Positions 3,149 through 14,030 are shown, counted from the stretch's first letter. The stretch is DNA of 14,906 nucleotides from Vitrella brassicaformis CCMP3155 (GCA_001179505.1 CDMY01000861.1:1-14906), one strand, 5' to 3'. Notes: generated from the sequence alone by a model not told the origin. Made by a program: numbers and translations.

Positions 3149-4013
3149 TCAGTAAAAACGGAGGCTACATGCCTTCCACACGGCGGTGCGTTCTTGTCCA
3201 CTTCTGCCTGGTGGCCAATCTTGTTGACGACTTGCACCCAGATGAGCGAGCGGGTCGAGCAGCTGGTGGAGGTTTGAGTAGAGCAGCTGCCGAGTGCCTG
3301 CATCCATCCGACACAAGAGAGTGATGTGCGGAAAGATAGTGGTGCGTATGAGATGCACGATACGTACCTGTACAGACAGACAGGTGTTGTAGGCGTGGTA
3401 CTCCGTCGGTCATGGTCATGCCCAAGGCTGCGAGCTCCATAGCGCCGTAAAACGGATGCATGCTCTCCAGCCCCAGTGCAACGAACCATGGCCAACATCG
3501 TATCAATCGCCATCAAAACCAAGCGTGGATACAATGGGCCAAAAGCAAGAGGCCAATAACAATACACAGCGTCATGTAGGCGCGACAAAACGAAAAAGGG
3601 TGCAGACAGTAGACAGGTGTACGACAAATACTTCATTAGACGGCAAGAAACGGATTGGACTCAACACAGGGACAGACACACACACACACACACCAGAGAG
3701 AGAGAGATTCATCGCATCAAAAATACAAACCTATCATCGCTATCTAGATTCAATGAGCCGATACTGCTTCTGGAAGACTTTGTTTCAGAGCATCTAGCGT
3801 GCGATTTCCATACCTGACGCCGTGCGTAACACTACTGCCTCATCAACGCTGAAGAACTCACAAATATCTATCTGACTATTTGGATCCCACACCAACTTGA
3901 AGTCCCGCACAATGTCGTCCGAAAACAGCGGCGTCCGAAAACAATGCCATCCTCAGTATCAGAAGAAGATCCTCCCGCCGCGGAAGGGTAGGGTTCCGTG
4001 ATGGCCGTGACAT
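3149..4013 (-). pseudogene. Probable frameshifted, spliced gene of unknown family with a weak F-box-like N-terminal pattern
   Basis: ATG at 4013. Removing a 16-nt tandem duplication (CGTCCGAAAACA at 3916-3927 and 3932-3943) gives MSRPSRNPTLPRREDLLLILRMALFSDDIVRDFKLVWDPNSQIDICEFFSVDEAVVLRTASG. This ends at a phase-1 donor (CAG|GTATGG, 3814/3813) that fits the acceptor at 3298/3297 (GATGCAG|GC) and continues TRQLLYSNLHQLLDPLA... to TGA at 3149. The putative intron has a sense-strand (GT)n tract and a long AG-free pyrimidine-rich stretch. Confidence 0.35.
3676..3706. repeat. Compound (CA)n(GA)n microsatellite
   Basis: acacacacacacacacacaccagagagagagag read directly. Confidence 0.9.
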
Positions 4014-4146
4014 AGATAGACATCACGTTGCATATAGGCAGCTGTTGTCTGTCAGTAGTAAGTCGCATGTGTATGCTGGGCGGACAAGTGCGGATTTCAA
4101 AGCTGATTGTCATCCCTCTATTTGCCTATGGCTAGCTTCAGCGAAT

Positions 4147-6937
4147 CTACCGGCTTTCAGAGACACTGAGGCGTTCGAATTCAACAGGACTAATACGGGC
4201 CACCCAGCCAGCAAAATCAGTCAGGATGCCCTTTCCTTTCCATCCTCTCATTTGCGAATTCTTCACGAGGAAAGCGGTATACCCTGCACCAACGACACGT
4301 CTCCACACAGAGATGAACTCATCCTTGGACATAAGGGTGTCATAAAGAGGAAGGTTGTCCACTCGCAGATCGTATGGCGGCACGATTGGTCCCTTGTTGT
4401 TCTCAAATCNNNNNNNNNNNNNNNNNNNNNNNNNNNNNNNNNNNNNNNNNNNNNNNNNNNNNNNNNNNNNNNNNNNNNNNNNNNNNNNNNNNNNNNNNNN
4501 NNNNNNNNNNNNNNNNNNNNNNNNNNNNNNNNNNNNNNNNNNNNNNNNNNNNNNNNNNNNNNNNNNNNNNNNNNNNNNNNNNNNNNNNNNNNNNNNNNNN
4601 NNNNNNNNNNNNNNNNNNNNNNNNNNNNNNNNNNNNNNNNNNNNNNNNNNNNNNNNNNNNNNNNNNNNNNNNNNNNNNNNNNNNNNNNNNNNNNNNNNNN
4701 NNNNNNNNNGACCCCAGTCTTGGCTCCGCCGTGTCCGGGCAATCTCTTCCATCCAGGCCAACAAGAAGGGATTCCTTGGTTCAAAATTGACCAAAGGATC
4801 GTTTTGAATGTGGAACTTCCACTTCGGGTTGGCGTTGGGGTGCTGCTTGTGCTTTCCATCTACCAAAGTGAACGTGGACCCAAAATAATGTTTCTGTGTT
4901 TCCCCGGGCCATTCCAGGATTGGAAGCACATTTAGATCCTGCATGATGGGGCGCAGCATCAGGTCATCCGTGTCCATCCAGGTACCTCCCCATTTCCACA
5001 GCGCTACAAGCCGAACCGCATCGCTGGTTTCTCTCCAAGCCACAGGTTGCATGCCTTGAAGCGGCGTGTCGTCAAAGAAAGATTGAGACCAAAACAGTAG
5101 ATGCACCTTGGGATATTCAGTCAACTTTTCCTCCAGACTTGCCGATACAATCTTACGCTCCGTAATGAAATAGACATGCGATTTTGGTTGGAACAGGGAT
5201 ATACTCTTAAGCAAATGTTGAAGTTGGCGGGAGCGATAAATGTCGGGCGGTCTTCCGCACCACATGAGAAAAATATTGTCAATCGTGGGCGTAGGATGAT
5301 CAAACGAAGACGGCGTGATGCGTGGATGTCTTGCGAATTCCTCAACCTCGCGATGTACTAGAGTCATTGTCGTCATGAGCGGCAGCTCATTACCTTTCCC
5401 GAATGTAACAGCAAAAGTCCAGGATGGTGATTCGGAGTCCGACTGCTGCTGCTCCGGCCGCCGAGAGAGCCGTCTGGGAAAAGGGGCCAGGCCGACGGCA
5501 AAGTAAAAAGAAGTGTCTCGATTCTGCACGGCAATTGGATCCACTGGCATGATGGACCGACAGCCGGGAATCCATGCATCATAGCTCGGATGTCTCTCCG
5601 CATTAAAGATTACAACGCGATGATCATACCAAAGGTGTCCTTTGATTCGTTTTTGTTGATGAACGATGGCCACCATCAGGGACTTCTCGCTTAGGGGTTG
5701 CTGCATCAAGGCATCAATGGCATGTGCACCATTCAGCCCCCAATCCAATGGCACGAGTTGAGAGCTCCCACGCCACTTGGTACTCTTGAGAGTTTGACAT
5801 GATCCGGGCGATAATGACATGGATGTACGCCAGACGGCTTGACCATTAGTTGTATCGATCCCAGAAACTAACGGTCCGCTATTCTTCTCGGCCCCAAAAT
5901 CCACAAACACGTTGACATTCGTCAGATCAGGAAGGGGATATAGCATCGGCACGAGGTTTTTGCGGGGTATCCGGTCTTCGTGCATCACAAGTTCTACGCC
6001 GCTTAAATTGTCGGTGCACGCGCCGACACAGTTCACTGCCATCATTTGTACGCCTTGATATCCTGAGGGCTTAGGCACGCAACATCGAATCTCGATCGAG
6101 AGGGGCTGCCCATCCATTCCGTGTGGATACCGCTTATCATGAGACGCCTCACATGGCCGCGGACATGAAGCCCACAGAGTGTCGTCGAACCGCAGCGCGT
6201 CCATCCTGAAAATGCGCTGTGAGTAATTGGCCGTCATTCTGTATCCTGCCCGTCTCCAGTGGCCTCGTCTCGTTCCCCCTGAACCCGCCAGAGCAAGTTC
6301 TCCATCCTTTCCATGTCGGGTCAGGAACAGACGCACGTCGGCCACCTTTTCACCCCGCATGTTTTGCACGAAGGTAGGCTCTACAAGCCAATCGCCAACC
6401 TGCACAGACAATCATTACAGAGTATCTTCGCAAGCCTACATTTACCTGCACGGAATGTGATGGCCCGTCAAGAATGTGTTGCAACCGCTGAGGCCGGATG
6501 AAGCCGACGAAATTGTGAGCTCCATACGCCGCGTTGGGAATGCGTGCAAACCATGAGATGGCCAACACCCCCTCCAGACAGTAGGGAGAGACACCCACAA
6601 ATAAGGAACAGAGCGGAGCCCATGCATATTGTGGAACAAAGAGGATGGAGGGGTTGTACGGAAGCCATTTCTCTTGACGAAGGTAGGACCCGCCCAGGGT
6701 AATATGCTGTCCCGATTGGATTAGACGCAGCATGTCTGCGGTCGTCATCGGGATAGCCGCCGGGGGGGCCTCCGATTGTCTCGGGATTGCACCTCGAGTC
6801 TGGTCCAGAATCAAATACCAGCCCAGCCATTGGCAACCCAGAAATAAACCCAGAAATACACATACGGGCCACATCCATCGGACAGCAGGCAGCGGGATAG
6901 ATACAGATTCCGACTGGACTGGACTGCCTTGTGTCAT
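4147..6937 (-). CDS. Type II membrane multidomain glycosyltransferase: signal anchor + GH130/GT91/GT108-like beta-propeller + GT32 (Gly_transf_sug, DxD) domain. Exons 6937-6446 and 6399-4147; contains a 300-N gap
   Basis: GT32 signature SDAVRLVALWKWGGTWMDTDD (about 4963-5025), preceded by IFLMWCG and LLKSISLFQP, with QDWG at the gap edge. Hydrophobic anchor WMWPVCVFLGLFLGCQWLGWYLIL at residues 21-44 after the ATG at 6937. Propeller-type motifs YNPSIL, ADVRLF, KNLVPM, RGSSQLVP, IVH..YDHR, FAVGL and VTFG occur in the expected order. An in-frame phase-0 intron at 6445-6400 joins the two ORFs. Nominal length is about 914 aa, but the true gap size is unknown. Confidence 0.85.
4410..4709. other. 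Assembly gap (300 N) inside the GT32 domain
   Basis: Run of exactly 300 N. All four gaps have the same length, so this is a placeholder size. Confidence 0.99.
6400..6445 (-). other. 46-nt GT-AG intron of the glycosyltransferase gene
   Basis: Minus strand reads CAG|GTAAATGTAGG...GATTGTCTGTGCAG|GTTGGC. It is phase 0 and puts ORF 6350..6952 in frame with ORF 4147..6411. Confidence 0.8.
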
Positions 6938-7358
6938 CCTCCAGCCGATCACCTCACGAAAGAGAACGGCTATGGAACCGCCGGTTGGGAAAAGTGAGCA
7001 GAAACAATGGAACAGAGCAACCCGCTCACTGTGCTTCGTGAAGTGTATTCCGAGTAAGGGGCACCCACTGCGTGGGCATCCCGGGCCGCGAATTGGGCGG
7101 GGGTCGAATAAAGCGTGCGAAGTTCATTCATTCATTCATTCACTCGAGCGTCCTCATGAACACACAAGGCATTCATTCGGACGAATCGAGCGCACTGCGG
7201 GACACCCTGCAGAGACCAGGGCGGCGAGTCCGGCTCACCAAGGTTTCCCTTGGCTACCCCTGGGTTTCACATGCCCCGTATTTTAGAAGCGCGGGGGAAA
7301 AGCGCCCTGCCCCTGTTTGCTATCCCGTCGGGCGACGGCTGGCTGGTTGTGCTCGTGA

Positions 7359-7511
7359 GTGTGTGTGTGTGGGTGTGTGGGTGTGTGGGTGGGTGTGTGT
7401 GGGTGTGTGGGTGGGTGTGTGTGGGTGGATGTGTGTGGGTGGGTGTGGGTGTGCGTGTGTGTGTGTGTGGTGTGTGTGTGTGTTTGTGTGTGTGTGTTAG
7501 TGTGTGTGTGT
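7359..7511 (+). repeat. (GT)n/(GGGT)n microsatellite immediately after a GTGAGT donor-like site (7355)
   Basis: About 150 nt of GT/GGGT repeats read directly. The ORFs crossing it (CVCV/VWV runs) are repeat artefacts. Confidence 0.95.
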
Positions 7512-7720
7512 TAGGTTGTTCGTGAGGGTGCGTGATGTTCAGGTTTCTGTCTGCCCCCTTCCCCCTGTGGCCCGGGATTTTGTCCGTGACTAGACAACGC
7601 TATGAAATAGCGCTTACTCGATGCTAATTGACCAATCGATAAGAGACACAATTAAGAATAAATGACGACAAGCAGACGAGTTAACACGAGTCAACTCGAC
7701 CGATGTCACGCGCACCGCAG

Positions 7721-10260: not shown

Positions 10261-10560
10261 NNNNNNNNNNNNNNNNNNNNNNNNNNNNNNNNNNNNNNNN
10301 NNNNNNNNNNNNNNNNNNNNNNNNNNNNNNNNNNNNNNNNNNNNNNNNNNNNNNNNNNNNNNNNNNNNNNNNNNNNNNNNNNNNNNNNNNNNNNNNNNNN
10401 NNNNNNNNNNNNNNNNNNNNNNNNNNNNNNNNNNNNNNNNNNNNNNNNNNNNNNNNNNNNNNNNNNNNNNNNNNNNNNNNNNNNNNNNNNNNNNNNNNNN
10501 NNNNNNNNNNNNNNNNNNNNNNNNNNNNNNNNNNNNNNNNNNNNNNNNNNNNNNNNNNNN
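10261..10560. other. Assembly gap (300 N)
   Basis: Run of 300 N. Confidence 0.99.
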
Positions 10561-12379: not shown

Positions 12380-12764
12380 ACAGGTTGGAGAACAGTTATA
12401 CGCGCCCTAGAGCCATGCGAATGCGAATGCGAAATGGCGGATAGATAGATGGACGGTTAGCGCCCGCTCTCCTTCTGTCTACCTGTCCCTCCTTGCATCG
12501 GACAAAAGACTCTTGCGTGTTCCGTGAAGGCTCTTTGTGCTTGGTGTGCGTTAGTCGATACCTCGCTTGACCACTGTGTTACGCAACTGGTTATGAGCCC
12601 ACTTGGCTACTCCTGCGGGGAGAAGGCACACAAGCTTGCGGCCAGGGCAGTTCCCATGCTGCTGATAGGCTATGATGGTCGAACCAAGGATGCCTATTGC
12701 ATGTGGAACCCCAAAACGAGACGCGTCATCATCTCGCGTGATGTTCGTTTCCTCGAGAAGCGTA
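12380..12764 (+). repeat. 385-bp segment duplicated at 14031-14415 (gap-edge overlap, likely assembly redundancy)
   Basis: Apparently identical at offset 1651. Copy 1 ends exactly at the gap at 12765 and copy 2 starts exactly after the gap at 14030. Confidence 0.95.
12602..12764 (+). mobile_element. Ty1/copia Pol fragment (post-integrase SH3-like domain), first assembled copy, cut by gap
   Basis: KLAARAVPMLLIGYDGRTKDAYCMWNPKTRRVIISRDVRFLE matches the copia consensus KL..RA....flGY......Y..w.P..rrv..SRDV.F.E. Confidence 0.85.
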
Positions 12765-13064
12765 NNNNNNNNNNNNNNNNNNNNNNNNNNNNNNNNNNNN
12801 NNNNNNNNNNNNNNNNNNNNNNNNNNNNNNNNNNNNNNNNNNNNNNNNNNNNNNNNNNNNNNNNNNNNNNNNNNNNNNNNNNNNNNNNNNNNNNNNNNNN
12901 NNNNNNNNNNNNNNNNNNNNNNNNNNNNNNNNNNNNNNNNNNNNNNNNNNNNNNNNNNNNNNNNNNNNNNNNNNNNNNNNNNNNNNNNNNNNNNNNNNNN
13001 NNNNNNNNNNNNNNNNNNNNNNNNNNNNNNNNNNNNNNNNNNNNNNNNNNNNNNNNNNNNNNNN
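12765..13064. other. Assembly gap (300 N)
   Basis: Run of 300 N. ORFs spanning it (e.g. 12524..13660) are chimeric. Confidence 0.99.
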
Positions 13065-13730: not shown

Positions 13731-14030
13731 NNNNNNNNNNNNNNNNNNNNNNNNNNNNNNNNNNNNNNNNNNNNNNNNNNNNNNNNNNNNNNNNNNNNNN
13801 NNNNNNNNNNNNNNNNNNNNNNNNNNNNNNNNNNNNNNNNNNNNNNNNNNNNNNNNNNNNNNNNNNNNNNNNNNNNNNNNNNNNNNNNNNNNNNNNNNNN
13901 NNNNNNNNNNNNNNNNNNNNNNNNNNNNNNNNNNNNNNNNNNNNNNNNNNNNNNNNNNNNNNNNNNNNNNNNNNNNNNNNNNNNNNNNNNNNNNNNNNNN
14001 NNNNNNNNNNNNNNNNNNNNNNNNNNNNNN
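13731..14030. other. Assembly gap (300 N)
   Basis: Run of 300 N. Confidence 0.99.

What the first reader, a model, noticed from the sequence alone, without database searches (positions are those of the whole stretch)
4147..6937. Two-module glycan enzyme: GH130/GT91/GT108-like beta-propeller fused to a GT32 domain behind a signal anchor
Seen: after splicing, one protein carries an N-terminal TM anchor and the ordered motifs YNPSIL, ADVRLF, KNLVPML, WRGSSQLVPL, IVHQ..YDHRVVIF, FYFAVGL and FAVTFG (about 6660-5390), then a clear GT32 core (SDAVRL..WGGTWMDTD). Established: the series NPSI / EDxRLF / KNWxPF / RGG-S / H..Y.H / F..GL / yG marks five-bladed propellers related to GH130 mannoside phosphorylases, Candida BMT beta-1,2-mannosyltransferases (GT91) and Leishmania MTPs (GT108). 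GT32 enzymes are retaining alpha-glycosyltransferases (Och1, A4GalT). Inference: a Golgi-type bifunctional enzyme that could add alpha- and beta-linked sugars in one polypeptide, or synthesise and trim a surface or wall glycan. The Asp-x-Arg of the EDxR motif is retained. I do not know of a characterised protein with this architecture. This is the strongest candidate for new biology in the window.
Basis: partly seen in the sequence, partly recalled or inferred. Interest (0 to 1): 0.75.

Follow-up and report, generated by a model that had tools for sequence, protein, structure and literature searches.

The report
GH130-fold propeller fused to GT32 transferase
The alga Vitrella brassicaformis expresses one membrane-anchored protein joining a propeller shaped like bacterial and Leishmania beta-mannose enzymes to a GT32 sugar transferase. 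This pairing recurs in other protists and in virus-like gene clusters and has not been described, so it may mark a new glycan-building enzyme family.

Summary
A minus-strand gene (ATG 6937, 46-nt GT..AG intron 6445-6400, stop 4149-4147) encodes about 850 aa.

- **Gap:** the 300-N gap really holds 108 bases, in frame. Contigs of four runs and a public Vitrella protein bridge it with 37 conserved residues.
- **Transcript:** spliced contigs cover 4013-7075, so anchor, propeller and GT32 lie on one transcript and in one ORF.
- **GT32 half:** it passes Pfam PF04488, keeps D-x-D-D and models as a retaining-type GT-A.
- **Relatives:** an exhaustive HMMER search found only 27. Nearly all long ones carry the same GT32 subfamily, in either order (two deep clades). 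In gene-dense AT-rich contigs the two are adjacent genes inside glycan-synthesis clusters with pyruvyl transferases.

Best reading: a secretory-pathway two-module glycan synthase, with an alpha-retaining GT32 and a beta-inverting GT108-like propeller. Activity, sugars and residue-level active-site equivalence are untested. It is a new sequence family and architecture within known folds.

The parts
4147..6937 (-). Whole coding region of the gene (two exons, one intron, one assembly gap). About 850 aa once the gap is read as 37 codons.
   Evidence: ORFs and translations. P0001 is 100% identical over exon 2 and spans the exon junction and the gap. A single spliced contig covers 4013-7075 in runs X1 and X3.
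6446..6937 (-). Exon 1: Met1, short cytosolic tail, signal anchor, stem and the first blade motif (YNPSIL).
   Evidence: There is no ATG in any frame in the 138 nt of transcript upstream of 6937.
6806..6877 (-). Hydrophobic signal anchor or TM segment, aa 21-44.
   Evidence: Kyte-Doolittle 19-residue windows reach 1.83. Homologues P0003, P0004, P0006, P0008 and P0013 have an N-terminal hydrophobic segment at the same place.
6400..6445 (-). 46-nt GT..AG intron, phase 0.
   Evidence: Sequence. The 46-letter skip is seen in contigs of X1 and X3 and is retained in the X4 contig.
5350..6727 (-). Five-bladed beta-propeller module (aa about 71-514) of a sequence family unknown to Pfam, with a Cys-rich insertion between blades 2 and 3.
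6337..6339 (-). Asp185 (full-length numbering) in ADVRLF: candidate catalytic acid of the propeller.
   Evidence: Conserved in 19 of 20 aligned relatives, family consensus ADPRLF. Equivalence to GH130 D104 and GT108 Asp86 is inferred from blade position and spacing only.
5956..5961 (-). Lys311-Asn312 (the KN of KNLVPML). Lys is the only invariant residue of the family alignment.
   Evidence: Spacing fits GT108 Lys136 and GH130 R150/K; this is inference.
4246..5289 (-). GT32-type GT-A glycosyltransferase module (aa about 535-818), interrupted in the window by the N gap.
4963..4974 (-). D-T-D-D (Asp640, Asp642, Asp643): the DXD metal and nucleotide-sugar motif.
   Evidence: Invariant D118, D120 and D121 in the 11-sequence alignment A3.
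4410..4709 (.). Assembly gap written as 300 N. The real content is 108 nt coding 37 residues together with the edge bases, including conserved motifs of the GT32 subfamily.
4013..4146 (-). 3' untranslated region, at least this long, on the transcript contig.
   Evidence: X1 record 1 starts at 4013.
6938..7075 (-). 5' untranslated region without any ATG. The contig stops at a dispersed 31-nt repeat.

Best explanation
This is one expressed Vitrella brassicaformis gene for an about 850-aa type II (signal-anchored) protein of the secretory pathway, with two luminal enzyme-type modules.

Module 1 is a five-bladed propeller with the GH130/GT108 fold. It belongs to a small sequence family not yet modelled by Pfam.

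Module 2 is a GT32-type GT-A domain with an intact DXD motif.

I propose that both modules are active glycosyltransferases working on one glycan. The GT32 module would add an alpha-linked sugar with retention from a nucleotide sugar. The propeller would add a beta-linked sugar, most likely mannose from GDP-mannose, with inversion, as the GT108 enzymes of Leishmania do. In that mechanism a blade-2 Asp acts as the acid, and a Lys/His/Tyr set holds the donor phosphate.

Together they would build an alternating or branched alpha/beta motif of a wall or surface glycan, in the manner of two-domain synthases such as LARGE or EXT.

Shown: gene structure, expression as one transcript, both folds, conserved pairing.

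Inferred: catalytic activity of the propeller, donor and linkage, Golgi location.
For: - Gene model and gap.
- One spliced contig 4013-7075 in two runs, and the gap bridged in four runs by 108 nt.
- The public protein P0001 is 100% identical and spans both the junction and the gap.
- Differences in a second strain or allele: 18 synonymous against 21 non-synonymous, one in-frame 3-nt insertion, no stop.
- Conserved polar residues sit at the start of successive blades: N95, D185, R187, K311, N312, D331, R374, H411, Y422. After removing the low-confidence insertions, their spacing matches GT108 Asp86, Lys136, His212, Tyr229, Asp289 and the GH130 key residues.
- GT32: above the gathering score; invariant D-x-D-D; retaining GT-A fold, Och1 among the matches.
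- Functional coupling: of the long HMMER hits, 7 are propeller-GT32 and 6 are GT32-propeller, two of the latter being N-truncated ORFs.
- The two orders fall in two clades separated with 98/99 support.
- In locus L003 the propeller (P0016) is a separate gene next to a GT32 gene that is 35% identical (E 3e-50) to the Vitrella GT32 half, and next to a pyruvyl transferase.
- P0025 is a propeller-pyruvyl transferase fusion inside a cluster with GT32, GT25, O-FucT, methyltransferase and hexapeptide acyltransferase. L006 has a sugar-nucleotide epimerase/dehydratase next door.
- These are biosynthetic contexts, not catabolic ones.
- N-terminal anchors or signal sequences occur in most eukaryote-type relatives, and conserved cysteines occur in the insertion.
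Against: - No sequence-level link to GH130, GT108 or any Pfam family. The relation rests on a predicted fold with 7-12% identity.
- I could not obtain a residue-by-residue superposition, so the active-site equivalences are spacing-based inference.
- The residue before the candidate acid is Ala, not the Glu or Tyr of GH130.
- About 20 residues after the conserved Lys, roughly where GH130 and GT108 carry a phosphate-binding Arg or His, this family has a conserved Asp (D331).
- The Vitrella copy deviates from the family consensus: ADVR instead of ADPR, and Asn501 where most relatives have Asp. It sits on a long branch (2.05).
- GH43 hydrolases score nearly as well as GT108.
- No activity, localisation or glycan data exist.
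Confidence: 0.5

Rival explanations
1. The propeller is not catalytic. It would be a carbohydrate-binding or acceptor-positioning module, a dead-enzyme lectin that presents a specific glycan to the GT32 domain, which is then the only enzyme.
For: - No sequence-level membership in a catalytic family.
- The Vitrella copy departs from the family consensus at several motif positions and is a long branch.
- One relative (P0013) has Asn in place of the candidate acid.
- Propellers often serve as binding modules.
Against: - A constellation of polar residues (N, D, R, K, N, D, R, H, Y) is kept across a family with only about 21% mean column identity. This is typical of an active site.
- The propeller also occurs as a stand-alone gene in biosynthetic clusters, and fused to a pyruvyl transferase without a GT32 in the same chain.
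Confidence: 0.25
2. The propeller is a GH130-like glycoside hydrolase or phosphorylase that trims or remodels the glycan made by the GT32 domain (synthesise and trim).
For: - The best fold matches are GH130 phosphorylases and hydrolases.
- GH130 hydrolases are the members that carry signal peptides.
- A conserved extra acidic residue (D331) lies where GH130 phosphorylases have a phosphate-binding Arg, which could fit a base for hydrolysis. This is inference.
Against: - The genomic contexts of relatives are purely biosynthetic: nucleotide-sugar enzymes, several GTs and modifying transferases.
- A conserved His/Tyr pair at the spacing of the donor-phosphate binders of GT108 is retained.
- Fusion with a GT in both orders across a deep split is more typical of co-polymerising enzymes.
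Confidence: 0.15
3. The fusion is an artefact: two neighbouring genes joined by mis-assembly across the N gap, or by a wrong gene model.
For: The window has an N gap inside the gene, and the public model P0001 starts at an internal Met.
Against: - The propeller-GT32 junction lies in uninterrupted sequence about 600 nt away from the gap, inside one ORF.
- Contigs from four studies bridge the gap in frame.
- Homologues from other samples have the same continuous architecture.
Confidence: 0.02

Closest known systems
GH130 beta-mannoside phosphorylases and hydrolases (e.g. RaMP1 5AY9, BfMGP 3WAS/4KMI, Teth514_1788 9GPH, Uhgb_MP 4UDG)
   Different: - 7-12% identity, with no Pfam PF04041 hit and no HMM hit.
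- About 130 extra residues in insertions, including a Cys-rich one.
- Ala instead of Glu or Tyr before the Asp.
- Membrane-anchored, eukaryotic, and fused to a GT.
- Found in biosynthetic rather than catabolic contexts.
GT108 mannosyltransferase/phosphorylases of Leishmania (MTP1, 2, 4; 6Q4W, 6Q4X, 6Q50)
   Different: The MTPs are small (about 300 aa), cytosolic, single-domain and make storage mannogen. No sequence-level similarity was detected. The position of their Arg/His phosphate switch seems occupied differently here.
GT32 enzymes (Och1 alpha-1,6-mannosyltransferase 9N3S; A4GALT and related)
   Same: Pfam PF04488 above threshold, DXD motif, GT-A fold, type II membrane topology.
   Different: - A distinct subfamily with its own conserved motifs after the DXD, seen only together with the propeller.
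- No hit to the Gb3-synthase C-terminal Pfam region.
Two-domain glycan co-polymerases (LARGE1 GT8+GT49, EXT1/2 GT47+GT64)
   Same: Works-like comparison from general knowledge: one Golgi type II polypeptide with a retaining and an inverting transferase domain that alternate on one chain.
   Different: Different folds for the inverting half (GT-A or GT-B there, propeller here). No evidence yet that this protein makes a polymer.
Glycosylation gene clusters of giant viruses (Megavirinae fibril glycans; PMC10117803)
   Same: The split version of the pair (L003, L009) sits in compact clusters with pyruvyl transferase, hexapeptide acetyltransferase, papain-like DUF1796, methyltransferases and several GTs, like the clusters listed in that paper.
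   Different: The viral origin of those contigs is inferred from gene density, AT richness and gene content only. That paper mentions no propeller-type or GT32 enzyme.

Membership tests
GH130 | Five-bladed beta-propeller fold | tested here: met
GH130 | Significant sequence similarity to family members (Pfam PF04041 or PDB chains) | tested here: not met
   No hit at E up to 10 for any of the 23 family members against Pfam, nor for the single sequence or the profile against PDB sequences.
GH130 | Catalytic Asp proton donor (D104 in Uhgb_MP) preceded by Tyr or Glu | tested here: inconclusive
   A conserved Asp in A-D-P/V-R at the start of a blade-2 strand. The preceding residue is Ala. No residue-level superposition was available.
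GH130 | Phosphate-binding Arg/His pair (R168/H231) for phosphorylases, or a second carboxylate for hydrolases | tested here: inconclusive
   A conserved His411 and Tyr422 are present. At the expected Arg position the family has F-x-D-F (D331). The mapping is by spacing only.
GT108 | GH130-like propeller fold | tested here: met
GT108 | Sequence similarity to MTPs | tested here: not met
   no MTP chain was matched at E up to 10.
GT108 | GDP-mannose-dependent beta-1,2-mannosyl transfer | not testable with these tools
   Needs an enzyme assay.
GT91 (Candida BMT) | Sequence similarity to beta-1,2-mannosyltransferases of yeasts | tested here: not met
   No Pfam family of any kind matched the propeller at E up to 10. 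The claimed fold relation of GT91 to GH130 was not tested here.
GT32 | Match to Pfam PF04488 (Gly_transf_sug) above the gathering score | tested here: met
   28.7 bits against a cut-off of 23, E 2.1e-6. The same domain is in 11 relatives.
GT32 | DXD motif | tested here: met
   D640-T-D642-D643. These are invariant columns D118, D120 and D121 of alignment A3.
GT32 | GT-A fold of retaining type | tested here: met
GT32 | Retaining alpha-transfer from a nucleotide sugar | not testable with these tools
   Needs an enzyme assay.

The most novel reading that the evidence does not exclude
The propeller founds a new glycosyltransferase family. It would be an inverting beta-glycosyl (probably mannosyl) transferase with the GH130/GT108 fold that works in the secretory pathway of protists and in giant-virus factories.

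It would always be teamed with a dedicated GT32 subfamily, as a fusion in either order or as a neighbouring gene, to polymerise an alternating alpha/beta glycan. In some lineages that glycan would then be capped by a pyruvyl transferase.
Probability: 0.3. Interest if true: 0.8.

Novelty: new variant of a known kind. Interest (0 to 1): 0.62.

Why it matters
- **Fold as transferase.** Only one glycosyltransferase family (GT108, cytosolic, in Leishmania) is known to use the GH130 propeller fold. A second, secretory-pathway family would show that this fold was recruited for glycan synthesis more than once. It would give CAZy a new family candidate.
- **Conserved pairing.** The strict pairing with one GT32 subfamily holds in both domain orders and as adjacent genes. 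It is a clean Rosetta-stone case and predicts a specific alpha/beta glycan motif in algal walls and possibly in giant-virus fibrils.
- **Testability.** It gives a directly testable handle on the almost unknown surface glycans of chromerids, the free-living relatives of apicomplexan parasites.

Tried and rejected
- **Pfam on exon 1, exon 2 and the post-gap piece:** only PF04488 was found. The hits to dehydratase, Caps_synth and TcdA_TcdB were below threshold.
- **phmmer and profile hmmsearch of the propeller against PDB sequences:** only chance hits to diol dehydratase and ribosomal eS1.
- **Pfam scan of all 23 aligned propellers at E up to 10:** nothing relevant.
- **Word-based protein search:** it found only the protein itself and one homologue, which is why the exhaustive HMMER search was used.
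- **The search for related loci in viral contigs with alignment A2:** failed because no stretch was conserved enough.
- **Residue-level mapping to GH130 or GT108:** not possible. The tools return no structural alignment or coordinates, and I had no GH130 sequence from a tool.
- **Organisms of most relatives:** not named. Only Vitrella, Amoeba proteus (a transcriptome, so contamination is possible) and Prymnesium polylepis (a fragment) carry names.
- **Mis-assembly or two-gene artefact:** rejected.
- **Exon joining:** Searches used the exons by reference, or the public protein P0001, which already spans the junction.

Full report
**Gene structure and the gap**

The feature lies on the minus strand. 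Exon 1 runs from the ATG at 6937 to 6446 (164 codons). A 46-nt GT..AG intron (6445-6400) follows. Exon 2 runs from 6399 to the stop at 4149-4147.

The program's first question was the N run at 4410-4709.
- The public protein P0001 (UniRef A0A7S1P3F1, Vitrella brassicaformis, 782 aa) is 100% identical to the exon-2 translation on both sides. It fills the gap with 37 residues.
- The lone C before the gap and the GA after it complete the first and last of those codons.
- Independently, contigs of four public runs from four studies bridge 4409 to 4710/4712 with 108-110 letters.
- The two sides are therefore continuous and in frame, and the gap is 108 nt rather than 300.
- The bridging residues carry motifs conserved in all relatives.

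**Expression and 5' end**

In runs X1 and X3 a single contig covers 4013-7075 and skips exactly the 46-nt intron. The X4 contig keeps the intron. The anchor exon, the propeller and the GT32 module are therefore on one spliced transcript. The junction between the two modules lies inside one uninterrupted exon in any case.

The 138 nt of transcript upstream of 6937 hold no ATG. Met1 at 6937 is thus the first start codon. The public model, which begins at Met69, most likely lacks the real N-terminus.

Residues 21-44 are hydrophobic. Most eukaryote-type relatives carry a hydrophobic segment at the same place.

A diverged strain or allele (X8, X4) differs at 39 coding sites: 18 synonymous and 21 not. 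It also has one in-frame 3-nt insertion and no stop. This fits moderate purifying selection.

Searches used the exons by reference, or P0001.

**The GT32 half**

- Pfam gives PF04488 above its gathering score (28.7 against 23 bits).
- The D-T-D-D motif is invariant among 11 relatives.

**The N-terminal module**

At sequence level it is unknown. There was no Pfam hit and no PDB sequence hit with the single sequence or with a 23-sequence profile.

An exhaustive HMMER search of 1.84 billion representatives found only 27 relatives. With their alignment (A2), AF2 gave a confident model (pLDDT 81.3, pTM 0.86).

- ESM Atlas look-ups point the same way.

The module is therefore a five-bladed propeller closest to GH130. 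By sequence it is not a member of GH130, GT108 or any modelled family.

Each lies at the start of a strand of successive blades.

After discounting the low-confidence insertions, the spacing Asp185, Lys311, His411, Tyr422, Asn501 matches the GT108 donor-binding set Asp86, Lys136, His212, Tyr229, Asp289 (PMC10913872). It also matches the GH130 key residues (PMC7660257). This mapping is inference, because no residue-level superposition was available.

Differences from those families:
- Ala precedes the Asp, where GH130 has Glu or Tyr.
- A conserved Asp (D331) lies near the place of the phosphate-binding Arg/His.
- Vitrella has ADVR and Asn501 where most relatives have ADPR and Asp.

**Relatives and context: the strongest new evidence**

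- Seven long relatives are propeller-GT32.
- Six are GT32-propeller, two of them N-truncated ORFs that start inside the GT32 domain.
- One is propeller-pyruvyl transferase, and four are propeller alone.
- In the propeller tree the two orders fall into two clades split with 98/99 support.
- The GT32 halves from both orders are 27-40% identical to the Vitrella one and share the subfamily motifs.
- In the gene-dense, AT-rich locus L003 the stand-alone propeller P0016 lies between a stand-alone GT32 gene (35% identical to the Vitrella GT32 half, E 3e-50) and a pyruvyl transferase. A hexapeptide acyltransferase and a papain-like DUF1796 lie nearby.
- L009/L010 place the propeller-pyruvyl transferase fusion in a cluster with a double GT32, GT25, O-FucT, a methyltransferase and a hexapeptide transferase.
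- L006 has a sugar-nucleotide epimerase/dehydratase next to the propeller.
- These clusters resemble the fibril-glycan clusters of Megavirinae (PMC10117803). That these contigs are viral is my inference.
- Named sources are few: Vitrella, Amoeba proteus (transcriptome) and Prymnesium polylepis (fragment). The rest are marine and other metagenomes.

**Mechanism**

The contexts are biosynthetic. The pairing with a retaining GT is kept across a deep split and in split form. The fold has a precedent as an inverting, GDP-Man-dependent beta-mannosyltransferase (GT108), and recently as a dual phosphorylase/transferase in GH130 (PMC12814180).

I therefore favour a two-activity glycan synthase: an alpha-linkage from GT32 and a beta-linkage from the propeller. 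It would act in the lumen of the secretory pathway and work like LARGE or EXT.

Rivals are a non-catalytic acceptor-binding propeller, and a trimming hydrolase or phosphorylase. A mis-assembly artefact is excluded.

**Novelty**

Literature searches for GH130 with GT32, and for GT91 with GH130, found nothing on such a fusion.

Two earlier notes of this scan, on other pieces of the same genome, report a similar propeller fused to GT64 (s1-205498) and another propeller-GT32 fusion (s1-231229). I did not test them. If they hold, Vitrella has a small set of propeller-plus-retaining-GT fusions, which fits the co-polymerase idea.

The protein itself is already in UniProt, but only its GT32 part is named.

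I rate it a new sequence family and a new architecture built from known folds, with interest 0.62.

Noticed in passing
window 7046-7078: A dispersed repeat of about 31 nt, with a short CCCAC...GTGGG palindrome, lies at the 5' end of the transcript contig. In all four runs many contigs share it and diverge on both sides, and the summed depth there is 3 to 40 times that of the gene in three of the four runs (1524 in X8, where the adjacent exon-1 bins have no coverage). It may be a common 5'-UTR or promoter element, or a small mobile element.
   Followed up: no
window 12524-12763 (+), continuing after the N gap 12765-13064: An ORF matches Pfam PF25597, the retroviral-polymerase SH3-like domain (E 2e-13). 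It is a copia-type LTR retrotransposon remnant of the alga, broken by assembly gaps. I only noted it.
   Followed up: no
window 7250-7525: A long imperfect (TG/GTGTGC)n microsatellite just upstream of the gene produces spurious Cys/Val-rich ORFs on the plus strand.
   Followed up: no
window 10261-10560, 12765-13064, 13731-14030: There are three more N runs of exactly 300. The one inside the gene really stands for 108 nt, so these lengths are placeholders too.
   Followed up: partly
L003 1452-4616; L009 2603-9049: Gene-dense AT-rich metagenomic contigs carry GT32, propeller and pyruvyl transferase as neighbours or fusions. They also carry a hexapeptide acyltransferase, papain-like DUF1796, DUF5767, GT25, O-FucT and methyltransferases. 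This looks like a giant-virus glycan cluster.
   Followed up: partly
P0001 against window 6734-6937: The public Vitrella protein model starts at Met69 and so lacks the signal anchor that the transcript contig and the homologues support.
   Followed up: yes
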